Shown: positions 16,084-35,025, counted from the stretch's first letter. The stretch: 64,000 nucleotides of DNA from IMGVR_UViG_3300024503_000485:1-64000; one strand, 5' to 3'. Numbers and translations: made by a program. The notes: generated by a model from the sequence alone, not told the origin.

Positions 16084-16152
16084 TAGGCCCCGCTGCTATA
16101 CACACGTACATGTATGCAAAAGAAAAGACTATTATCTAAAAGCAGAGACTCT

Positions 16153-16631: not shown

Positions 16632-16708
16632 CACGCATTAGCTCAGTTGGATAGAGCAACAGCCTTCTAAGCTGTGGGTCAGGGGTTCGAATCCCTTATG
16701 CGTGGCCA
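16632..16708 (+). tRNA. tRNA-Arg (anticodon UCU)
   Basis: Cloverleaf: acceptor CACGCAT/ATGCGTG, anticodon arm ACAGC-CTTCTAA-GCTGT, TTCGAAT T-loop, encoded CCA. Confidence 0.95.
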
Positions 16709-16712
16709 GTTA

Positions 16713-16790
<78 letters not shown>

Positions 16791-17097: not shown

Positions 17098-17418
17098 ATG
17101 CGAGCAAAGAGATCAGATCGTAATCACATCATCTATGAACTACGTGTTAACGGTGAGAACTACATTGGTGTCACAGCCAAGACTGAATCAACTATTAATA
17201 AGAGTGTTCGCGCTCGTGCTGCCAAGCACTTCTATCGTGCCAAAACAGAAACTAAGAATTGGCTGCTTTGCTCAGCTCTACGCAAGCTCAACAGCAAAGA
17301 AGAAATTGAAATCATTGTTCACGAGATTGTTCGTGGCAAAGCCCTGGCCCATAAGCGCGAAGTAGAAATCCGCAGACTGGTAGGCCCTACACTAAACACA
17401 GACACACGAGGAGACTAA
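17098..17418 (+). CDS. GIY-YIG-like protein
   Basis: HIIYEL...YIGVT; GGAGCG RBS. Confidence 0.55.
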   Translation: MRAKRSDRNHIIYELRVNGENYIGVTAKTESTINKSVRARAAKHFYRAKTETKNWLLCSALRKLNSKEEIEIIVHEIVRGKALAHKREVEIRRLVGPTLNTDTRGD

Positions 17419-18309: not shown

Positions 18310-18648
18310 ATGCAGACACTTTTTAGCACAGCAGGCGACGGCTTGTGGAGCAACGTAGCAAAGCCTGTACACATTGTAGACATGCAACTTGCCTACATTA
18401 ACGACGAGAGAGATTTTGGCGAGCTGCGTGTTTACTTTAACACTAAGTTTTGGGACGTTAACAAAGACGGTCTCATTTACACAGACAGCAACTTTATTGA
18501 AGAACTGCGCAATTTTTTAATTGCACAAGAACTAACTGACGACTGCGACTACAGCGAGCAAGGCATGCAGGGAGACAACTACGTTAGCTTAGACGTGGGA
18601 GAGGGCTTTATTGCTGCGTGGGATGCAAAGTTTAACTTGTTTGCATAA
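18310..18648 (+). CDS. hypothetical early protein
   Basis: Own promoter plus GGAGCG RBS. Confidence 0.7.
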   Translation: MQTLFSTAGDGLWSNVAKPVHIVDMQLAYINDERDFGELRVYFNTKFWDVNKDGLIYTDSNFIEELRNFLIAQELTDDCDYSEQGMQGDNYVSLDVGEGFIAAWDAKFNLFA

Positions 18649-18720
18649 GCACAAAACGGGGGTTGACAACAGCCCCCGTTTATAGTACAATAGACACACA
18701 TTAACACAAAGGAGCGTGAA

Positions 18721-19143: not shown

Positions 19144-19224
19144 GGGTTATTACTGAATGGGGTTGACAACAGCCTCATTTGGTAATATAATAGAGGTATG
19201 TTCAACAAATGCATAGGAGCGAAA

Positions 19225-20298
19225 ATGCCAGCAGTAATTGAGATTCGTGAGGGTTCGTATAAGATCCGTGGCTCAGATGTGAGCATGGCCGGTAACCGTT
19301 TCGAACTAGTAGAGCAATACAAAGAAGGTGCTCAGGGTGGTTATGTAACCGTAGAAGGTGGCTCTGTACAGCCTGCTAACCCTGGCATTCCAGATCGTAA
19401 GATCCGTATTCGTTGCAGTTCAGCACAAAGTTACATGATTGTCGCCGGTGAAGTGCCAGCAATGCCCGCAGGTGATAAAAGTTTGGAGCAGATTAAAATT
19501 TCAGATAATGCCGTAGCACACGAAACGGACGAGCAGATCATCGAACGTCTTCGTAACCGTTTTGACGTGCTCAAAGATATGACCAAAGCAGTCAAAGAAG
19601 GTACCGTGCGAGCTATGATCGTCACAGGCCCTCCAGGCGTGGGCAAGAGCTTTGGTGTAGAAGAAGTACTAAGCAAGGACGATCTCTTTGATATGATGGG
19701 TCAGCGCAAGCCCAAATATGAGATTGTCAAAGGCGCAATGTCAGCAGTGGGTCTGTACAGCAAGCTCTATCACTACAGCGAAAAAGGCAATGTTATCGTG
19801 TTTGATGACTGCGACTCTGTGCTGTTGGATGACCTTAGCCTTAATATTTTGAAGGCTGCTCTGGACTCTAGCAAGAAGCGTACTATCTCTTGGAACACTG
19901 ACAGCCGTGTTCTGCGTTCAGAAGGAGTGCCAGATCGCTTTGAATTTAAAGCAGGCGCTATCTTTATCACTAACATCAAGTTTGAGAATGTGCGTTCTAA
20001 GAAACTGCAGGATCACCTTGCCGCTCTTGAAAGCCGTTGCCACTACATTGATCTTCAAATGGACACAGATCGCGAAAAGGTCTTGCGCATTAAGCAGATC
20101 ACCCAAGATGGCATGTTGGACAGCTACGAGTTTGAAGACTGCGTTAAGGATGAGATCATTGATTACATTCTTGAAAAACGAGCACAAATGCGTGAGCTGA
20201 GCCTGCGTACGGTACTCAAGGTAGCAGACCTGCGCAAGAGCTTTCCTACAAATTGGAAGAGCATGGCAGAAGTTACCGTTATGAAGCGAGGTGCCTAA
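19225..20298 (+). CDS. AAA+ ATPase
   Basis: Walker A GPPGVGKS, Walker B IVFDDCD, ALESR arginine finger; start at ATG 19225 after GGAGCG. Confidence 0.85.
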   Translation: MPAVIEIREGSYKIRGSDVSMAGNRFELVEQYKEGAQGGYVTVEGGSVQPANPGIPDRKIRIRCSSAQSYMIVAGEVPAMPAGDKSLEQIKISDNAVAHETDEQIIERLRNRFDVLKDMTKAVKEGTVRAMIVTGPPGVGKSFGVEEVLSKDDLFDMMGQRKPKYEIVKGAMSAVGLYSKLYHYSEKGNVIVFDDCDSVLLDDLSLNILKAALDSSKKRTISWNTDSRVLRSEGVPDRFEFKAGAIFITNIKFENVRSKKLQDHLAALESRCHYIDLQMDTDREKVLRIKQITQDGMLDSYEFEDCVKDEIIDYILEKRAQMRELSLRTVLKVADLRKSFPTNWKSMAEVTVMKRGA

Positions 20299-20540
20299 TG
20301 GAAGGCCCGTCTAAGACCTGTACTTGGATTGGGCCCGAGCAGGACCCTTTGAAGCACTGGCCCATTCATTACTGCGGGTGTCCTAGTGTTCAAGGGTCTA
20401 GCTACTGCGCTGATCACTACTGGAAGGTCTATGCTCGAGGCACTTCAGTTAACGGCCGTCGACGTGAACGTGCCATAGAGCAAGAGATTCAACAACTTAA
20501 ACAAGCACAAGAGCTTGAGGAGTATGAAAATGAAAACTAA
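20298..20540 (+). CDS. GcrA C-terminal-like Cys-rich protein
   Basis: TCTWIG...HYCG...GSSYCADH resembles the GcrA pattern CxWPIG...FCG...GxxYCxxH. Confidence 0.55.
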   Translation: MEGPSKTCTWIGPEQDPLKHWPIHYCGCPSVQGSSYCADHYWKVYARGTSVNGRRRERAIEQEIQQLKQAQELEEYENEN

Positions 20541-20810
20541 CATCTTTACAATTGCCCTGCTGGCGCTTGTAATCGTATTCTTTTTTGCCGTAGGTCCTAT
20601 CCTGGTAATTTGGAGTATGAATACACTATTCCCCGTGTTGGCCATTCCGTATACGTTTTGGACATGGTTAAGCGTGGTCTTGCTCGGCGCATTCTTTCGA
20701 GCAAATGTTTCCATTAAACGGAAAGATTGAGGTTGCTATTTTACAACAAGAATGCTACTATATTGACACGCTGTGGAACACAGCCATATAACATAAAGGA
20801 AAACACAGAC

Positions 20811-21086
20811 ATGAAACGTATCTCTAAAGACTCAAAGACTTTTAAGATTTTTACTGCACTACAAAATGGTGACAAACTAACTGCAAGCCAAGCTGAGAAG
20901 CGTTTTGGCGTAAAGAACCTGGCTGCTGAAGCAAGCCGTCTCCGCCAAGCTGGTTATGCTGTTTATGCTAACTCTCGCAAGGCAGGTAATGGTGTTACCG
21001 TTACTGAGTATGAACTAGGCCGTCCTTCACGCGAGATCGTTGCTCTAGGCTACTTAGCTCGTAACATGGGCATGACATTGGCTTAA
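20811..21086 (+). CDS. winged helix-turn-helix DNA-binding protein
   Basis: LQNGDKLTASQAEKRFGVKNLAAEASRLRQAGYAVY...YELG; AAGGA RBS. Confidence 0.75.
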   Translation: MKRISKDSKTFKIFTALQNGDKLTASQAEKRFGVKNLAAEASRLRQAGYAVYANSRKAGNGVTVTEYELGRPSREIVALGYLARNMGMTLA

Positions 21087-21162
21087 TAGGTCGCTCCACA
21101 AAACCAAGCCGATTCGCTCCCGGGGCGGTTTTGGAATAGGGTCCTAAGGGCCCTATTTTTTT
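21086..21162 (+). ncRNA. candidate 3'UTR anti-RBS sRNA A
   Basis: Seed ATAGGTCGCTCC; hairpin CAAAACC/GGTTTTG enclosing CCG-ATTCGCTCC-CGG; terminator AATAGGGTCC-TAA-GGGCCCTATT plus T-run. Confidence 0.55.
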
Positions 21163-21257
21163 GGCCGTTTGTTGCAAAAAAGCCACAGGCCGGCACTCTC
21201 CAAAATGGTTGACAGAACTGCTGTTTGATGGTATAATAGAGTTATTGTTAAGGAGCG

Positions 21258-21905
21258 ATGATGAGCACATTTACAGCAGATCAAGTTTGGGGCCTAGCTG
21301 TTAGGGCTGATACACAGAATGGCGGCTACTGCAAAGAGCCTGTATTCGCTGCTACCGCTACACACGGGATCGATTACAATAACGTGATCAAACAAGCCAA
21401 CAAGGTTCTGGTCAAGAACTGGCTCAGAGAGAATGCTCAGCCTACAGCAGAAGAGATCACTCTTGGCCAAGAGTATCGTAACTATTTCAAAACATTCACC
21501 CTCAAAGCACTCACTGGCAAGATCAATGACTTTGAGACCACAGCTATGAAGATTGCAGCCAAAGACGAGTTCACTGGCCGTGATATGTTGGACTTTGCTG
21601 TTGTCAGCTGTTTACCCAGCGTAGCTCGTCGTGATAAGGCCCAAACAGAGCTCAAGCGAGAGATCTATCAAAGCGAGCAACTCTCCGGCGCTGTAGGTGA
21701 TGAGATCGTAGGGGAGATCGAAGTGATCCGCACACGATTCAACCCTGAATACAACAAGTATCGCATCACTGCTCGTATGGGTGAGAGCTTTATTGATTTT
21801 TGGTACAAGGATGATGTCAAAGGCACTATCCGTATCAAGGGCAAGATCAAGAATGTTCGTGGCGATAAAACAACACAGCTCAACTATGTTAAAAAAGTTG
21901 GTTGA
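21258..21905 (+). CDS. hypothetical early protein (possible C-terminal OB fold)
   Basis: Own promoter plus GGAGCG RBS; ends KGKIK...TQLNYVK. Confidence 0.7.
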   Translation: MMSTFTADQVWGLAVRADTQNGGYCKEPVFAATATHGIDYNNVIKQANKVLVKNWLRENAQPTAEEITLGQEYRNYFKTFTLKALTGKINDFETTAMKIAAKDEFTGRDMLDFAVVSCLPSVARRDKAQTELKREIYQSEQLSGAVGDEIVGEIEVIRTRFNPEYNKYRITARMGESFIDFWYKDDVKGTIRIKGKIKNVRGDKTTQLNYVKKVG

Positions 21906-21982
21906 CAACTGCACCAAGAGGTGCTACAATAATGATACTGGGAAAGTAATTGTTTTAACTCTTTTTATTAGCGAGGTCTAGA

Positions 21983-23068
21983 ATGGCAAAAGCACAAGAC
22001 GTTTCCGTCCGTCAAGTTGGCCCTAAGGGTGCCAAAAAAGCAATCCGTCACGCAATTAAAATGCGTCGTCCTGTATTCCTGTGGGGCCCTCCAGGTATTG
22101 GTAAGTCCGATCTCGTGAAGCAGATCGGTGATGATTCCAACCGTGAGGTTATTGATGTGCGCCTAGCACTTTGGGAACCCACCGACATCAAAGGTATTCC
22201 GTATTACAACGCAGACCAGGGCAAGATGGTTTGGGCTCCTCCCGCAGAACTGCCCATTGACCCAGAGTCCACTGCTATCATCTTCTTGGATGAATTGAAC
22301 TCTGCTCCTCCTGCTGTTCAGGCCGCGGCCTATCAGTTGGTGCTGAACCGTCGTGTTGGTACCTATGTTCTGCCTAAGGGTGTTGACGTAGTCGCCGCTG
22401 GTAACCGTGAAGGTGACCGTGGTGTTACCTATCGTATGCCTGCTCCGTTGGCTAACCGCTTCCTGCACTTGGAAATGAAGGTGGACTTTGATGACTGGCA
22501 AGATTGGGCTACCCTTAACAAGGTGCATCCTGAGGTTGTAGGTTATGTGGGTTTTGCCAAGCAAGACTTGTATGACTTCGATCCTAAGAGCCCTAGCAAG
22601 TCATTTGCTACTCCTCGTTCTTGGAGTTTCGTCAGCGACCTGTTAGGTGATGACGGTGTTGACGAAGATACTTTGTCTACATTGGTAAGTGGTGCTATTG
22701 GTGACGGCTTGGCTGTTAAGTTTATGGCTCACCGTAAGATTGCTGGCAAATTGCCTAAGGCAGAAGACATCCTTATTGGCAAGGTCAAGGACCTTCAGAT
22801 CAAGGAAGTGTCAGCGATGTATTCTTTGACCGTTTCATTGTGCTACGAGTTGAAAGACCGTGCAGAGAAAAAGGTTAAAGATTGGGATGCTCAGGCAGAC
22901 AACTTCTTCCGCTACATGATGGACAATTTCCCAACTGAGATTGTGGTCATGGGTGCTAAGACTGCTCTTACCAACTACGACTTGCCGTTGGACGCTACAA
23001 AGATGAAGAGCTTTGACGAGTTCCACAAGCGTTTTGGTAAGTATGTTTTGAAAGCGATGGAGAATTAA
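21983..23068 (+). CDS. MoxR-like AAA+ ATPase
   Basis: GPPGIGKS, IIFLDE, AAGNR, PLANRF, TPRSW. Confidence 0.9.
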   Translation: MAKAQDVSVRQVGPKGAKKAIRHAIKMRRPVFLWGPPGIGKSDLVKQIGDDSNREVIDVRLALWEPTDIKGIPYYNADQGKMVWAPPAELPIDPESTAIIFLDELNSAPPAVQAAAYQLVLNRRVGTYVLPKGVDVVAAGNREGDRGVTYRMPAPLANRFLHLEMKVDFDDWQDWATLNKVHPEVVGYVGFAKQDLYDFDPKSPSKSFATPRSWSFVSDLLGDDGVDEDTLSTLVSGAIGDGLAVKFMAHRKIAGKLPKAEDILIGKVKDLQIKEVSAMYSLTVSLCYELKDRAEKKVKDWDAQADNFFRYMMDNFPTEIVVMGAKTALTNYDLPLDATKMKSFDEFHKRFGKYVLKAMEN

Positions 23069-23225
23069 GACCTCGCCCATCGCCGGGCGGGGGCTCACCC
23101 AGGGCTTCCGCCCACCTTTTGGAGTGCCGGGCGGTGTTGTAAATACGCAACATCGTCCGGTTTCTTTTTGGTTGACAAACCCGGATCCTGGTGCTATAAT
23201 ATACACATACTAAGGAGAGCGACTA

Positions 23226-24434
23226 ATGTCTACAAACATCGTTGATAAATTAACTACTGCACGGGTCGGTCTATTGCTCAAAGCACCGTTCTTTGGCAAC
23301 ATGGCAACTCGTATGCGTTTAGTCTGTGCTGACGACTGGTGCCCTACTGCGGCGACCAATGGCCGTGACTTTTATTACAACACAAAGTTCATCGAAAAAC
23401 TTTCAGAGAAAAAACTAGAGTTCCTGTTTGGTCACGAGATCCTTCACTGCGTGTTTGATCACTTTGGCCGTGTAGGTAGCCGTGATCGTCAACTTTCTAA
23501 CATCGCACAGGACTTTGCTGTAAACCAAATCCTTGTAGACGAGCGTATTGGTGAGAAGATCACTGAGGTTAAGATCTGTTATGATCCTAAGTTCCGTGGA
23601 CTTGCTTGGGAAGAAATCTACGATATTCTGTATGAAAAAGCAGAGAAGATTCCTATGGATCAACTGATGAAAGAGTTGGGCGATCTGTTGGACGAGCACA
23701 TTAAGGAACAAGAGGGTGCTGGCTCAGAAGATGACAAGACCAAAGACGGTAAGAGCAAGCCTAGCCTTAGCAAAGAAGAAGCAGAACGCATCAAGCAAGA
23801 GATCAAAGAAGCAATGATCCAAAGTGCCGCGGCCGCTGGTGCAGGCAAGACTCCTGCAGGCATTATGCGTATGATTAAGTCTATGACTGAGCCTAAGATG
23901 GACTGGCGTCAGTTGGTGCAACAAGAGATCCAAAGCATTGTTCGCAACGACTACTCCTTCCAGCGTGTTAATCGCAAGAGTATGCACTCAGGCGCAATCT
24001 TGCCAGGCATGAAAGAAGCAACTACCATTGACGTGGCTATTGCTGTTGACATGAGTGGTAGTATTGGTGAAGAAGATGCCAGCACATTCCTTTCGGAGAT
24101 CAAAGGCATCATGGACCAATACGAGGACTTCAAGATCAACCTGTGGTGCTTTGACACAGAGATCTATAACCCACAAGAGATCACTCATGACAACTCACAT
24201 GACTTGCTTGAGTATGAACCTCAAGGTGGCGGTGGCACAGACTTTGATGTCAACTTTACCTACATGGAAGAGAATGACATTCGCCCTAAGAAGTTCATTA
24301 TGTTCACAGACGGCTATCCCTGTGGTAGTTGGGGTCCTGAGGACTACTGCGACACAATCTTTATCGTTAAGGGCAATACACAAGCAGAGGCGCCCTTTGG
24401 TCAAACGGTGATCTACGAAAAAGAGGCGGGCTAG
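23226..24434 (+). CDS. putative metallopeptidase plus VWA domain protein (DUF2201-like)
   Basis: TAATNG, HEILH (HExxH), DMSGS MIDAS, GGGGTDF, MFTDG. Confidence 0.9.
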   Translation: MSTNIVDKLTTARVGLLLKAPFFGNMATRMRLVCADDWCPTAATNGRDFYYNTKFIEKLSEKKLEFLFGHEILHCVFDHFGRVGSRDRQLSNIAQDFAVNQILVDERIGEKITEVKICYDPKFRGLAWEEIYDILYEKAEKIPMDQLMKELGDLLDEHIKEQEGAGSEDDKTKDGKSKPSLSKEEAERIKQEIKEAMIQSAAAAGAGKTPAGIMRMIKSMTEPKMDWRQLVQQEIQSIVRNDYSFQRVNRKSMHSGAILPGMKEATTIDVAIAVDMSGSIGEEDASTFLSEIKGIMDQYEDFKINLWCFDTEIYNPQEITHDNSHDLLEYEPQGGGGTDFDVNFTYMEENDIRPKKFIMFTDGYPCGSWGPEDYCDTIFIVKGNTQAEAPFGQTVIYEKEAG

Positions 24435-25550
24435 GAGAGTGCCGGGGGGTGTGGCTAAAAAGCCACACTTCCACCAAAGGCCCCGCTGCTACACGTATGC
24501 ACGTATATAGATTATGGTTGACAGATAGATAATTTGGCCTTATAATACATATACACAGACACAGAAAGGGGCGGTAAATGGAACTAGTAATTGCATTTGT
24601 CCTTGGGCTCATAGTAATGGACTTAATGTGGGCCTGGCGCTTGGGCATCCCTCAGATGCTTTGGGCACGTTGGAAGTATCGCAAAGTCCTTAAACAAATG
24701 TCAGAACAGGAGCAATCATGAAAGTATTCATCGCAGGTACAATCTTTGGTCTCGTAGTGGCTACCGTAGGATTATCGGGCATCGCTAAGATCTTCGATAA
24801 TGGGGTTGCCAAAGTCCAGGAAGTATCTAAAGAAGCTGCGAAGTAATGCCTAGATACACGTTCTGGCGCAATTCTATAATCTGCGAAGTCTACGAACTTG
24901 AAGCAGGTTCAGAAGAGGAAGCACGTGAAAAGCTCATGAATGGAGAAGTGGACCCAATGACCGAAGAATGGGTTGATTGGGCCACTGACAACTTCGAGCT
25001 GGAAGACGTGGAAGATGAATTGGTAACATTCTTAAAATCAAAGGAAACAACATGACTTTTGGTATGATCGTTGAAGATCCCTTTTATGATGAAGATGGTG
25101 TACTCATTGACGAGGATGCTGATTGGGAAGATGTTGCAGACCCGGGCGACCTAGTCTACAACGAAGACATCGGCGAATGGTTGGACAAAGAGCTAGCTGC
25201 TCACGATCGCACCTACAGCCCATTCGATACAATCAACAGCTAACGTACATCATTTTGGTTGACAACTTGGCTTTTTGGTGTTAAACTATAGGCATAGTGA
25301 AAGGAGCCAGCTGTGAATCAAAATGAATTTGAATACCTGAAGCGAGCCGTTGATGCATTGGGATCGTCAGAGACAACTCCGATGGCCCGTGTCAAGATCT
25401 TAAGGACGATGGAGCAGATCGCCGGACGCTGTGCCGTGGTGATCGAGAGGGAGTTCCAAGACCGCGTAGATCAGAACTTGGCCAATGCACATTTGGTTGA
25501 CCTTTTGAGAAAATGATTGTATAATTTTAACACTAACTTAAGGAGCGAAT

Positions 25551-26741: not shown

Positions 26742-27044
26742 ATGGCTACAGATAAGAAATTTGCGGTTGCTGGTGTTTCGACACTGGAAGGTAAGACCAA
26801 GCTTCGTTTCGCTAACGATGTTATGCGCATCAAGATCTTGGCAAAGAACGGTCACAAGGATGTTGAGCTCGTTGAGCTGCCATCAGAGATGACCAAGGCT
26901 GAGGCTGTACAACACCTCAAGAGCGTTGGTTTCGGCTCAGGCAATGCTGCTGTACAAGCTGCGATCGCCTACGCTGAGAAGAAGAATCCAGCCCCTAAAG
27001 CTGTTAAGACTACTGCCGCGAAGGCAGAGGCTGTTACCGCTTAA
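26742..27044 (+). CDS. small basic phage protein with Ala/Lys-rich tail
   Basis: FAVAGVS...KLRFAND.MRIKILAKNGH; own promoter. Confidence 0.75.
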   Translation: MATDKKFAVAGVSTLEGKTKLRFANDVMRIKILAKNGHKDVELVELPSEMTKAEAVQHLKSVGFGSGNAAVQAAIAYAEKKNPAPKAVKTTAAKAEAVTA

Positions 27045-27113
27045 ATCCGATTCGCTCCCGGTAGCGGTAACCTTGGGCCCTAGTATGCACACGTATACTA
27101 GGGCGTTTTTTTT
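27033..27113 (+). ncRNA. candidate 3'UTR anti-RBS sRNA B
   Basis: GTTACCGCT/AGCGGTAAC stem enclosing CCG-ATTCGCTCC-CGG; terminator GCCCTAGTAT/ATACTAGGGC plus T8. Confidence 0.55.
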
Positions 27114-28902: not shown

Positions 28903-30440
28903 ACAACAAAAGCCCTACACTCCGTAGGGCTTTTTCTTGACCTTTTGGCACTTTGGACATATAATACACTTACACAGAAGGAGAAGTGTATGAGAGTAGA
29001 AGTCAAAAGCCTATACAGAGTTCAATGCACAGAGTATGAAAGAGGCTATGGTCAAAGGGACATGGGTGTGGTGTTCTTTGACACAGAAGAAGAAGCCAAG
29101 CAGTTCTGCCTAGAATACGCCTCGGGTGATAGCGAATGCTACTTCCGAGCAAGCTACGAAAAGATCAACTAATTCTAGAAAGCCTAAAATGAAAAGCAAA
29201 GACACACAGATCTACAAGAACATTGGCTCTATCCAGGCAGTACAGGGTGACGAAGGCCGCTACTACTTCTACACTCACTTTGCTACAGGTAACACCTGCG
29301 ACGAAGACACTATCAAAGGTGCCAAAGAGATGTTGGATTGGGAAGAAAAGAACCATCAAGAAGTACAGGCTGCGATCCGTGTGCTTCAGGGTCGAGGTTA
29401 CAGAGTATTCAAAGAGGTTTGTTAATGGGATGGGTAGTCTACGATGCTCGTACGGGGCACATGCAAAAGTATTACAAGCTGGCCCGTACAGCCAAGAGTA
29501 TCGTCACGCAGCACAACACAGAACGAATCTATGAGGACTGGATCTATCGTCCTCAGAGCACTTGGGCCTGCTGCTCCTATGCAGACTACGAAGGGATCTT
29601 AATGGGTCTGCGTGGGGAAGCGTTTAAGATGTGGCAGTTTGTTAAGAATAACCCGCAGAGCTAAAGGGTCTTTCTTTTTGGTTGACCTTTGGGCCTTTTG
29701 GTGCTATACTATAGGTATAGTAAGGAGCGTGAAATGATAACAGAAAAACAACGTGTTGTAAATGCCCTAAAGGGTTGGCAGTTCATCCGTGGAACCCATG
29801 GTTGCTTGTATGATCGTGGCTCAGCAGATTCCTACTACGGCCGTCCACGTCAACCTCACTACGGTGGAGTGGGAGGCGATTCCGGCCGCCGAGTCTCGGT
29901 CAACGATGCTGCATCCGTGGCCGAATACTTGGCAGGCTACGACTACAACGAGCGTTATGGAGACAAAAAGAACTATGATTAATCATGGCCTACAATGGCT
30001 GGGCACAGCCGCTCTGATCTCTATGTATATTGTGATGAGCTTCTTTCCTGAGCGATATCCGCTGAATATCCTCTTAGGATTACTGGGAGGTCTATGCTAT
30101 TTTGCGTGGTCGTATCGTGTGGCAAATAAGCCACAGATGATCGTTAACTTCGCAGGAATAGCCGTGTGTGCCGCAGGGTTATTTCGTTATTTTGATTGAC
30201 ACTCAGGCACTTTGGCTATACAATTAACACATACGCTAAACAACTAGGAGCAGAAAATGGTTACACAAGCACAGGCAATGTTTGTATTTGTAGTAGGACT
30301 ACTAATCACAATGTTGGGCACAGGTGGTGTAGAAGCCAGCATCTCTAACCTAGAACTTCTACAAGGTCTAGCAGTGGCCATCACTGGCCTAGGCTGTATG
30401 GGCTGTGGTGTGCTCATGCTTAGGCAAGCCGAGGACTAAT

Positions 30441-34344: not shown

Positions 34345-35025
34345 ATGTTTGATTCAATTACAACTTATCGTTCAGCTGAAGCTATCAATAGTGCCATGGC
34401 CAGTGTTTATAAACACATGGGTCTAGCAGTATTGACCAGTATGATCGTTTCATTGTTTGTAGGAACCAATCCTGCACTATTGGCCTTTTTCTTTACAGGC
34501 TTTATAAAATGGATTGTTATATTTGCACCGCTGGTAGCTATTATTGCTCTTAGTATGAATATGGATTCTATGAGCAAGGGCACAGCACAACTAGCTCTAC
34601 ATGGCTTTGCCGCGCTAATGGGCTTGAGCTTTGCTACTATCTTTGCTGTCTACACTATGGGCAGTATTTTTTCAGCTTTTATGAGTGCCGCAGTATTGTT
34701 TGGCGTTATGAGCTTTTATGGTTATTTTACCAAGAAGAGTTTAGATAGCCTAGGCCAGTTTATGTTCATAGGCCTAATTGCCATTATCATTGCTAGTCTA
34801 ATCAATATCTTTATTGGCAGCACCTTAATGCAAATGGTTATTTCGGCTATTGCTGTTATTATCTTTCTAGGCCTTACTGCCTACGACACACAAAAGATTC
34901 GAGAAATGGTCAGCTATGATACAGCGGAAGGCAATGCTGAAATTGTTGGCGCACTAACTCTGTATCTTGATTTTATTAATCTTTTCCTAAATCTTCTACA
35001 ACTATTTGGCGGTAGAAAAGATTGA
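34345..35025 (+). CDS. yccA: Bax inhibitor-1/YccA family membrane protein
   Basis: Seven hydrophobic segments; AYDTQKI, GALTLYLDFINLF; promoter TTGACA 34296-17-TATAAT. Confidence 0.9.
   Translation: MFDSITTYRSAEAINSAMASVYKHMGLAVLTSMIVSLFVGTNPALLAFFFTGFIKWIVIFAPLVAIIALSMNMDSMSKGTAQLALHGFAALMGLSFATIFAVYTMGSIFSAFMSAAVLFGVMSFYGYFTKKSLDSLGQFMFIGLIAIIIASLINIFIGSTLMQMVISAIAVIIFLGLTAYDTQKIREMVSYDTAEGNAEIVGALTLYLDFINLFLNLLQLFGGRKD

What the first reader, a model, noticed from the sequence alone, without database searches (positions are those of the whole stretch)
20731..24467. wHTH gene with a palindromic operator over its own -35 and three more copies nearby: a local regulon
Seen: the 18-bp dyad TGTKGY-(A/T-rich N6)-RCMACA occurs at 20731 (overlapping the -35 of the wHTH promoter), 21170, 23135 and 24450. 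The last three are each flanked by GGAG(A)GTGCCGG (inverted at 21188-21201; 23121; 24434) and lie upstream of sigma70 promoters. Inference: the 20811 wHTH protein autorepresses and controls the 21258 gene, the peptidase-VWA gene and the 24.6-kb genes. Its transcript also yields sRNA A, which would couple transcriptional and translational control in one locus.
Basis: partly seen in the sequence, partly recalled or inferred. Interest (0 to 1): 0.7.

Follow-up and report, generated by a model that had tools for sequence, protein, structure and literature searches.

The report
Conserved dyad upstream of early phage promoters

Summary
The dyad TGTKGY-N6-RCMACA is real. There are 4 exact copies in the whole 219-kb phage record (0.08 expected per 64 kb): 21170, 23135, 24450 and an unlisted one at 30118. 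All lie in a GC-rich early-gene island full of consensus sigma70 promoters.

About 70 related IMG/VR loci hold 244 copies at the same and other places, confined to that island. The commonest layout is the dyad, 8-11 nt, then TTGACA.

About a quarter are the tips of longer hairpins; 23135 tops a clear intrinsic terminator. The rest have no stem extension, a third have non-pairing half-sites, 30% lie inside ORF ends, and other phages carry tandem copies 20 bp apart. That fits a DNA site for a dimeric protein built into PeSL-like terminator-promoter cassettes.

The 20731 "operator over its own -35" fails: one mismatch, chance level, absent in all relatives.

The winged-helix protein (HTH_39, 20811-21086) is the only recognisable DNA binder in the island. 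The link is unproven. Three relatives keep the gene but have no dyads, one has a very different recognition helix yet keeps dyads, and a different phage has dyads but no such gene.

Verdict: partly supported; a new variant of a known kind.

The parts
20731..20748 (.). Near-dyad GGTTGCTATTTTACAACA claimed as the autoregulatory operator; rejected
   Evidence: It has one mismatch, which is the number chance gives. No relative has a dyad here; the sequence is just the -35 plus spacer of the wHTH promoter.
20733..20761 (+). Weak sigma70-type promoter of the wHTH gene (TTGCTA-17-TACTAT)
   Evidence: Read. Relatives have TTGACC/TTGCAT-17-TAtTAT at the same position. The consensus scan did not find it.
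20768..20785 (+). 5' leader hairpin of the wHTH mRNA (GCUGUG-GAA-CACAGC, preceded by conserved ACGCTG)
   Evidence: Folds at -7.6 kcal/mol, z -2.4. It is present in every relative, with compensating changes and variable loop length.
20811..21086 (+). Winged-helix gene (91 aa, Pfam HTH_39)
   Evidence: Pfam E 1.4e-7 and phrog_4973. The AF2 model has pLDDT 87 with H1-H2-H3-wing-H4. The best PDB match is Stf76 of pSSVx. More than 2,300 unnamed homologs exist.
21099..21133 (+). Conserved structured RNA in the wHTH 3'UTR ('sRNA A'): invariant CCGAUUCGCUCCCGG on a covarying basal stem
   Evidence: Fold. There are 77 distinct copies in relatives, all on the + strand, with an invariant apex and a covarying base. 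The loop UUCGCUCC is complementary to the island's RBS AGGAGCGA (read).
21134..21165 (+). Intrinsic terminator of the wHTH/sRNA transcript (11-bp stem plus U7)
   Evidence: Fold.
21170..21187 (.). Dyad 1, TGTTGCAAAAAAGCCACA, with non-pairing half-sites; 21 nt upstream of the -35 of P21209
   Evidence: Located. It folds poorly as RNA (z -0.9). The orthologous site in 11 relatives keeps TGT.G./.C.ACA while the flanks and the pairing vary.
21190..21201 (-). Flank motif GGAGAGTGCCGG (inverted copy)
   Evidence: In relatives it sits at a fixed offset from the dyad, in either orientation.
21209..21237 (+). Consensus sigma70 promoter of gene 21261-21905
   Evidence: 12/12 match with an extended -10 TG.
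23121..23130 (+). Flank motif GGAGTGCCGG
   Evidence: Read; repeat family D17.
23126..23170 (+). Intrinsic terminator of the AAA-ATPase gene: 15-bp stem whose tip is dyad 2 (23135-23152), then TTTCTTTTT
   Evidence: Found. Folds at -29.4 kcal/mol, z -6.2.
23172..23200 (+). Consensus sigma70 promoter of the DUF2201 metallopeptidase-VWA gene (23226-24434)
24434..24490 (+). Conserved module after the DUF2201 gene: GGAGAGTGCCGG, then hairpin 24445-24472 with dyad 3 (24450-24467) at its tip, then GGCCCCGCTGCT (24479-24490); no U-run
   Evidence: Located. Folds with z -2.2. The module is conserved in about 35 relatives, and flank covariation extends the stem.
24518..24546 (+). Consensus sigma70 promoter of the small ORFs from 24578
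30118..30135 (.).
   Evidence: Located. It is conserved in the 88%-identity relatives L012-L015 and L076.

Best explanation
The 18-bp dyad is a double-stranded DNA recognition site for a dimeric, sequence-specific protein. Its half-site is TGTKGY and its spacer is 6 bp and A/T-rich.

The site is attached to a subset of the near-consensus sigma70 early promoters in the hyperplastic early-gene island of a T4-type jumbo phage family. It is built into PeSL-like terminator-promoter cassettes. Where a gene or the 3'UTR RNA ends just before the next promoter, the same dyad also forms the tip of the terminator stem, with G-run/C-run extensions and a U-run added. Elsewhere it stands alone, most often exactly 8-11 nt upstream of TTGACA, which centres it at about -54 in the UP-element/alpha-CTD zone. 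From there a bound dimer would modulate initiation at strong early promoters. I infer this is feedback damping or timed shut-off of a subset of early genes; the sign of the effect is not shown.

The ligand is not identified. The island's only recognisable DNA-binding protein, the HTH_39 winged-helix protein (20811-21086), is the leading candidate at about 0.3. A host factor or another small island protein is about as likely.

The wHTH does not autoregulate through 20731. What is conserved at its own promoter is a 5' leader hairpin.
For: Real and specific:
- 4 copies against 0.08 expected in the window.
- 244 copies in 910 kb of related loci.
- 7-9 copies per genome against 0-2 for the reversed control pattern, clustered within 10-15 kb of 280-364-kb genomes.
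- It is the top palindrome in dyad-bearing loci.

Acts on DNA, not RNA:
- 111 of 160 distinct sites have fewer than 3 extra flanking pairs, and 39 of these have non-complementary position-4 bases.
- Closing-pair combinations that would be G.U on the + strand (13) are no commoner than C.A (22) at plain sites. At hairpin-type sites they are 16 against 5.
- In the orthologous series of the 21170 site the two halves switch among TGTGGC, TGTTGC and TGTTGT independently while the flanks drift.
- 48 of 160 sites lie in ORF 3' ends.
- The spacer flips TAAAAA to TTTTTA in place.
- The flank motif occurs in both orientations.
- There are tandem arrays at 20/28-bp spacing in G012 and 20 bp in G013.

In register with promoters:
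- 144 of 160 sites have a promoter within 140 nt downstream.
- There is a sharp peak at a 10-nt gap.
- 46 sites with 8-11-nt gaps lie upstream of at least 25 different genes.

Dual use as a terminator:
- 23126-23161 folds at -29.4 kcal/mol, z -6.2, and is followed by a U-run.
- In many relatives the RNA after the wHTH gene ends in GGGG-dyad-CCCC-TTTCTTTT.

PeSL setting:
- The record encodes a T4 gp23 capsid protein, E 3e-98.
- The island holds about 20 consensus promoters.
- PeSLs are defined in PMC4122927.

wHTH as candidate:
- It has a winged-helix fold.
- No other DNA binder was found among 30 island proteins.
- The best-conserved site is 84 nt downstream of its stop codon.
- L062/G003 lacks both the gene and the dyads.
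Against: - No binding data exist. The one complex-prediction job was not folded.
- About a quarter of the sites are genuine extended hairpins, and the module after DUF2201 shows flank covariation, so an RNA role is real for some copies.
- The spacer is A-rich on the coding strand in 122 sites against 32. That is odd for a symmetric dimer.
- Against the wHTH as ligand: L073/G001 (50 kb), L054/G002 and L051 keep a 68-76% identical wHTH (helix N[LI]RAEATRIR) and the island, but have no dyads and no replacement palindrome.
- L052 has a very different helix (NPTATISDIRQ) yet keeps 2 dyads.
- G011 is a different phage, 69% complete, sharing only PhoH, a 2OG oxygenase and a 5'-3' exonuclease with this one. 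It has 6 dyads and no HTH_39.
- G007, G012 and G013 also have dyads and no HTH_39, but they are fragments.
- Five small island genes (17098, 25313, 29425, 29734, 30257) track dyad presence better than the wHTH across 8 genomes. This is confounded by shared ancestry.
Confidence: 0.55

Rival explanations
1. One reading: the wHTH is an autorepressor that binds the dyad over its own -35 and at three nearby promoters, forming a wHTH-controlled local regulon.
For: - The wHTH fold is confirmed.
- It is the only recognisable DNA binder in the island.
- Dyads cluster around it, and the most conserved one lies directly after the gene.
- Complete genomes G004 and G016 have both the wHTH and clustered dyads.
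Against: - 20731 has a mismatch, is at chance level and is absent from about 40 relatives.
- The sites lie upstream of the -35, not over the core promoter.
- Co-occurrence breaks down both ways: L051, L073 and L054 have the gene without dyads, while G011 and G007 have dyads without the gene. L052 has a divergent recognition helix but retains dyads.
Confidence: 0.2
2. The dyads are only RNA/DNA hairpins, that is, the stem-loop halves of PeSL-type terminator-promoter cassettes. Their sequence similarity is kept by recombination and cassette shuffling, and no sequence-specific protein is involved.
For: - 23126-23161 is a textbook terminator.
- 49 of 160 sites have stem extensions of 3 or more pairs, and 47 of those 49 have matched arms.
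- Flank covariation is seen after DUF2201.
- G011 carries GGGG-dyad-CCCC hairpins at gene ends inside repeated cassettes.
- Extra ORF cassettes in L025, L046, L047, L060 and L063 are bracketed by dyads.
- PeSLs are known in T4-type phages (PMC4122927).
Against: - Most sites cannot form a stable hairpin: there is no extension, and 35% have mismatched arms.
- There is no + strand G.U bias at plain sites.
- The arm sequence is conserved while the immediate flanks diverge, which 18-bp-limited gene conversion would have to explain.
- The sites hold a fixed 8-11-nt register to the -35.
- Some sites lie inside ORFs, and there are tandem copies 20 bp apart.
- Published PeSL stems are low-information G-run/C-run sequences.
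Confidence: 0.2
3. The dyad is the site of a host transcription factor or nucleoid protein that several unrelated phages of the same freshwater host have recruited to their early promoters.
For: - The same dyad, with variants TGTTGC/GCAACA and TGTGGC/GCCACA, occurs in G011. That phage shares no regulator with this one.
- About half of the IMG/VR hits to one dyad variant lie in loci with no gene of this island.
- The early promoters use the host sigma70 holoenzyme.
- Lineages keep the wHTH but drop all dyads.
Against: - A scan of 185,579 species genomes for TGTGGCNAAAANGCCACA gave only scattered single hits and no genome with a cluster.
- The host is unknown.
- No known factor with this site turned up in the paper search.
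Confidence: 0.2

Closest known systems
PeSLs (promoter-early stem-loops) of T4-type phages (Arbiol et al. 2010, PMC2839356; Comeau et al. 2014, PMC4122927)
   Same: - This is a T4-type phage, with a gp23 capsid gene.
- It has a hyperplastic region of small ORFs.
- Each ORF is preceded by a stem-loop or terminator followed by a near-perfect TTGACA-N17-TATAAT early promoter.
- Cassette indels between relatives are bracketed by the elements.
   Different: - Published PeSL stems are generic (G-run, loop, C-run). Here a specific 18-bp dyad is conserved across non-orthologous sites and diverged phages.
- The arms often do not pair.
- Some copies lie inside ORFs, at a fixed 8-11-nt register to the -35, or in tandem.
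- Only about 4 of the roughly 20 island promoters carry it.
Dyad operators of small viral winged-helix regulators, e.g. Stf76 of Sulfolobus plasmid-virus pSSVx (PDB 2mlg)
   Same: The protein is a small winged-helix protein of about 90 aa, encoded next to palindromic sites. Stf76 is its best structural match.
   Different: - Structural similarity is weak (Foldseek E 8.5e-3, 28% identity).
- Binding of this wHTH to the dyad is untested, and the phyletic link is imperfect.
- No site overlaps its own promoter.
Upstream (class I-type) activator sites and UP-element-zone operators at sigma70 promoters, e.g. CRP at -61.5 (from my own knowledge, not tested here)
   Same: It is a dyad with a 6-bp A/T spacer, centred at about -54 to -66 upstream of sigma70 promoters in a fixed register.
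   Different: - The half-site and arm spacing differ from CRP (TGTGA-N6-TCACA).
- The promoters here are already consensus, so activation seems unnecessary.
- No effector or protein is known.
Rho-independent (intrinsic) terminators
   Same: 23126-23170 has a 15-bp G+C-rich stem and a U-run. Many relatives have GGGG-dyad-CCCC-TTTCTTTT after the 3'UTR RNA.
   Different: 21170, 24450 and 30118 lack a U-run, a stable stem, or both. Terminators do not conserve stem sequence across unrelated sites.

Membership tests
DNA operator of a dimeric transcription factor | Dyad symmetry with fixed arm spacing, conserved in sequence rather than only in pairing | tested here: met
   The 6+6+6 layout is used throughout; spacers of 4, 5, 7 or 8 gave only background counts. 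The arms keep TGT.G./.C.ACA while 35% of plain sites do not pair. The orthologous series is shown.
DNA operator of a dimeric transcription factor | Fixed position relative to the regulated promoter | tested here: met
   There is a peak at a 10-nt gap to the -35. 46 sites with 8-11-nt gaps lie upstream of at least 25 different genes. The window's own sites have gaps of 21, 19, 50 and 60 nt.
DNA operator of a dimeric transcription factor | Demonstrated protein binding | not testable with these tools
   The complex-prediction job with DNA was not folded. This needs EMSA or footprinting.
   20731 has one mismatch and is absent from about 40 relatives whose promoter is conserved.
   They co-occur in G000, G004, G005, G009, G010 and G016-G019. 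L062/G003 lacks both. L051, L073 and L054 have the gene without dyads. G011, G007, G012 and G013 have dyads without HTH_39, but these are fragments.
   Pfam HTH_39, E 1.4e-7. AF2 pLDDT 87 with an H-H-H-wing-H layout. PDB matches are winged-helix regulators.
PeSL terminator-promoter cassette of T4-type phages | T4-type phage; element lies in a hyperplastic region of small ORFs | tested here: met
   gp23, E 3e-98. The 12-34-kb island holds about 40 small ORFs and about 20 promoters.
PeSL terminator-promoter cassette of T4-type phages | Stem-loop/terminator directly followed by a near-consensus sigma70 early promoter | tested here: met
   23126-23200 fits fully. 24445-24546 is a hairpin without a U-run. 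21170 is not a stable hairpin.
PeSL terminator-promoter cassette of T4-type phages | Associated with gene indels between close relatives | tested here: met
   An extra ORF between the wHTH gene and the 21261 homolog is bracketed by two dyads in L025, L046, L047, L060 and L063.
Intrinsic terminator | Stable G+C-rich stem followed by a U-run | tested here: inconclusive
   Met at 23126-23170. Not met at 21170 (z -0.9), 24450 (no U-run) or 30118 (inside an ORF). Only 17 of 160 sites in relatives have a T-run.
Host transcription-factor regulon | Site enriched in promoter regions of a bacterial genome | tested here: inconclusive
   One dyad variant was scanned over GTDB species genomes.

The most novel reading that the evidence does not exclude
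A T4-type jumbo phage family runs a self-contained early-gene control module. One early transcript gives a winged-helix protein that binds a dyad at about -54 of a subset of early promoters. It also gives a 3'UTR RNA whose invariant loop is antisense to the island's Shine-Dalgarno sequence. The same 18-bp dyad works both as the protein's DNA operator and as the RNA's terminator stem, so one sequence is read on DNA and on RNA.
Probability: 0.2. Interest if true: 0.7.

Novelty: new variant of a known kind. Interest (0 to 1): 0.45.

Why it matters
Early-gene control in T4-type phages outside T4 itself is poorly known. Their hyperplastic regions are usually described only as strings of generic promoter and stem-loop cassettes.

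Here a subset of those cassettes carries a specific, strongly conserved dyad in fixed register with the promoter. This points to an unrecognised regulator, phage or host, acting on early promoters in a very abundant group of uncultivated freshwater jumbo phages. The wHTH family alone has more than 2,300 members, and this 4-kb stretch is held in 24 riverine metatranscriptome libraries.

If the ligand is found, it gives a handle on early-gene timing. It would also be a clean case of one sequence serving as both operator and terminator. The site-to-promoter rule (dyad, 10 nt, TTGACA) can be tested directly in vitro with E. coli-type RNA polymerase.

Tried and rejected
- **Complex prediction** (wHTH x2 plus a 26-bp dyad DNA): not folded, so it gives no evidence either way.
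- **Megablast against GenBank phages:** no match. tblastn of the wHTH found only Pelagibacter phage HTVC008M at 34% identity.
- **PDB by sequence:** nothing relevant.
- **Papers on HTH_39, and on TGTGGC/GCCACA operators:** nothing useful.
- **Rfam over 12-35 kb:** only two tRNAs, nothing at the dyads or the 3'UTR RNA.
- **GTDB scan for one dyad variant:** scattered single hits with no candidate host regulon. Many hits are in Acidobacteriaceae, probably one conserved locus.
- **Metatranscriptomes:** 24 riverine RNA libraries hold the region, but they are kept as assembled contigs. No transcript ends could be read, contig breaks reflect strain variants, and DNA carry-over cannot be excluded.
- **Replacement palindrome in the dyad-less lineage (G001, G002, L051):** none found.
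- **Shared DNA-binding protein between G011 and this phage:** they share only PhoH, a 2OG-Fe(II) oxygenase and a 5'-3' exonuclease. The ORFs beside G011's dyads have no HTH.
- **Resemblances considered and dropped:**
  - sigma54 -24/-12 element in GGCAC: the spacing is wrong.
  - CIRCE (GCACTC-N9-GAGTGC): only one half is present.
  - CRP, Fis, TyrR and NifA boxes: the half-site or spacing differs.
  - REP/RAYT-like mobile hairpins: plain dyads lack the flank.
- **A window artefact corrected:** 17 loci with a wHTH but no dyads in 20 kb looked like counter-examples. The four of these checked as whole records do hold dyads 10-70 kb away; a fifth, a 41-kb fragment, has none.

Full report
**Setting**

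The window is the first 64 kb of a 219,444-bp IMG/VR virus record that CheckV rates 62% complete. The record encodes a T4-type gp23 capsid protein, E 3e-98.

The genome has 37.8% G+C, but 12-34 kb has 44-48%. That island holds about 40 small + strand ORFs and two tRNA genes. It also holds about 20 near-perfect sigma70 promoters of the form ggTTGACA-17-TAyAAT with AGGAGCG ribosome sites. This is the layout of the hyperplastic early regions of T4-type phages, whose composite terminator/promoter cassettes are called PeSLs (PMC4122927).

**The observation**

TGTKGY-N6-RCMACA matches exactly at four places:
- 21170-21187
- 23135-23152
- 24450-24467

Shuffles of the window give 0.08 matches on average. 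There are no further copies in the other 155 kb of the record.

The claimed site at 20731 reads GGTTGC...ACAACA and has one mismatch. The window has two one-mismatch sites. I estimate about two from chance alone.

The flank GGAG(A)GTGCCGG is at 24434 (+), 21190-21201 (-) and 23121. The three downstream promoters match the consensus 12/12. The 91-aa protein is a winged helix:
- Pfam HTH_39, E 1.4e-7
- AF2 model with pLDDT 87 and an H1-H2-H3-wing-H4 layout
- best PDB match Stf76 of pSSVx, followed by generic winged-helix regulators

**Relatives**

The DUF2201 protein retrieved 80 IMG/VR loci at 44-100% identity. They hold 244 exact dyads in 910 kb, which is 168 distinct contexts.

The dyads recur at the three orthologous places: after the wHTH gene, before the DUF2201 gene and after it. 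They also occur at many non-orthologous places.

In large records the dyads cluster within the island:
- 7 of 8 in the complete 364-kb G004
- 7 of 7 in G005
- 8 of 8 in G009

The reversed control pattern gives only 0-2 per genome. TGTGG-N8-CCACA, GTGGC-N6-GCCAC and TGTTG-N8-CAACA are the most frequent palindromes in dyad-bearing loci.

**DNA site or RNA hairpin?**

Both occur.

*Hairpin class.* 49 of 160 distinct sites have at least 3 extra flanking pairs, and 47 of those have matched arms. G.U pairs outnumber C.A on the + strand 16 to 5. In the window, 23126-23161 is a 15-bp stem followed by UUUCUUUUU (-29.4 kcal/mol, z -6.2). In many relatives the RNA after the wHTH gene ends in GGGG-TGTTGTAGAAATACAACA-CCCC-TTTCTTTT. 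The module after DUF2201 is GAGTGCCrGGGG-dyad-GrCCCCGCTGCT, and flank covariation lengthens its stem.

*Plain class.* 111 of 160 sites have no such extension.
- 39 have non-complementary position-4 bases, and G.U is not favoured over C.A (13 against 22).
- In the orthologous series of the 21170 site, the left and right halves switch independently among TGTGGC, TGTTGC and TGTTGT. Nine of eleven combinations do not pair, and the immediate flanks drift. The window's own copy folds no better than shuffles (z -0.9).
- 48 of 160 sites lie in ORF 3' ends.
- The spacer flips TAAAAA/TTTTTA in place.
- The flank motif occurs in both orientations at a fixed offset.
- G012 has three dyads within 66 bp and G013 has two at 20 bp.

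These features fit recognition of double-stranded DNA by a dimer. One feature does not fit neatly: the spacer is A-rich on the coding strand in 122 sites and T-rich in 32.

**Relation to promoters**

144 of 160 sites have a promoter within 140 nt downstream. Plain sites peak at exactly 10 nt between the dyad and the -35 hexamer. Terminator-type sites peak at 13-14 nt and 34-35 nt.

With more loci, 46 sites have 8-11-nt gaps upstream of at least 25 different genes. That places the dyad centre near -54, in the UP-element zone.

In the window the gaps are 21, 19, 50 and 60 nt, giving centres at about -66, -64, -95 and -105. None overlaps a core promoter.

**The wHTH's own promoter**

None has a dyad there.

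What is conserved is a hairpin at the start of the transcript, ACGCTG...CAGC, with compensating changes and variable loop length. The autoregulatory operator is therefore not supported.

**Is the wHTH the ligand?**

For:
- It is the only recognisable DNA binder among 30 island proteins scanned.
- The most conserved dyad is 84 nt after its stop codon.
- L062/G003 lacks the gene and the dyads.
- Complete genomes G004 and G016 have both.

Against:
- L073/G001 (50 kb), L054/G002 and L051 keep the island and a 68-76% identical wHTH with helix N[LI]RAEATRIR. They have no dyads, no GAGTGCC flank and no replacement palindrome.
- L052 has a very different helix (NPTATISDIRQ) but two dyads.
- G006 is complete, has a 49% identical wHTH and no dyads.
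- G011 is a different phage, 69% complete. It has six dyads as GGGG-dyad-CCCC hairpins at gene ends and no HTH_39. It shares only PhoH, a 2OG oxygenase and a 5'-3' exonuclease with this phage.
- Five small island genes (17098, 25313, 29425, 29734, 30257) match dyad presence across eight genomes better than the wHTH does. The dyad-less records are probably one lineage, so this carries little weight.

I put the wHTH at about 0.3 as the ligand. A host factor or another phage protein is comparably likely.

**Conclusion**

The dyad is a real, conserved, promoter-linked cis-element of a local early-gene cluster. It is most likely a protein-binding DNA site built into PeSL-like cassettes, and it is sometimes re-used as a terminator stem.

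Its specific mechanism, a wHTH autorepressor acting over its own -35, is not supported.

Noticed in passing
window 21099-21133 and 27041-27075: A conserved structured RNA motif. The apex CCGAUUCGCUCCCGG is invariant and sits on a basal stem that covaries. There are 77 distinct copies in relatives, all on the + strand. Its loop UUCGCUCC is complementary to the island's ribosome-binding site AGGAGCGA, so it could act as an anti-Shine-Dalgarno RNA. No Rfam family matches.
   Followed up: partly
window 20768-20785: A hairpin at the 5' end of the wHTH mRNA (ACGCTG...CAGC). It is present in all relatives with compensating changes and variable loop length. It is more likely an mRNA-stabilising or autoregulatory RNA feature than an operator.
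   Followed up: partly
window 12000-34000: A G+C-rich island (44-48% against 38% for the genome). It holds about 20 near-consensus sigma70 promoters and about 40 small ORFs on one strand. It looks like the early hyperplastic region of a T4-type jumbo phage; gp23 is at G000:117205-118188.
   Followed up: partly
window 18646-18690, 19154-19190; also L018, L073: Inverted repeats that enclose the -35 hexamer, e.g. AAACGGGGG-TTGACAACAG-CCCCCGTTT. The 3' arm of the upstream hairpin lies inside the next promoter.
   Followed up: no
window about 15770, 16086-16097, 24479-24490: The motif GGCCCCGCTGCT occurs on the + strand only (60 against 0 in relatives), always shortly upstream of a promoter. It persists in lineages that have lost the dyads.
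   Followed up: partly
window 16632-16790: Two adjacent tRNA genes, tRNA-Arg(TCT) and tRNA-Met(CAT), inside the early island.
   Followed up: yes
window 20298-20540, 17098-17418, 34345-35025: The 80-aa protein from 20298 has a weak, sub-threshold match to the C-terminal part of GcrA (E 0.008). The 106-aa protein from 17098 looks GIY-YIG-like by eye (IIYEL...YIGVT), has no Pfam hit, and tracks dyad presence. The protein from 34345 is a Bax1-I family membrane protein.
   Followed up: no
G012:33051-33116; G013:67119-67156; G011:3721-10524: More distantly related phages carry the same dyad. G012 has three copies within 66 bp. G013 has two copies 20 bp apart. G011 has four identical GGGG-TGTTGCAAATTTGCAACA-CCCC hairpins in repeated roughly 100-bp intergenic cassettes.
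   Followed up: partly
window 20400-25200: 24 riverine metatranscriptome libraries hold 77-94% of the sampled words of this 4-kb stretch (window 20700-24700), so the phage is abundant in the sampled river communities. Contigs branch at intergenic regions where strains differ.
   Followed up: partly
window 21858-21875: A one-mismatch dyad, CGTGGCGATAAAACAACA, lies in the 3' end of gene 21261-21905, 26 nt upstream of the -35 of P21902. It sits in conserved coding sequence, so its meaning is unclear.
   Followed up: no
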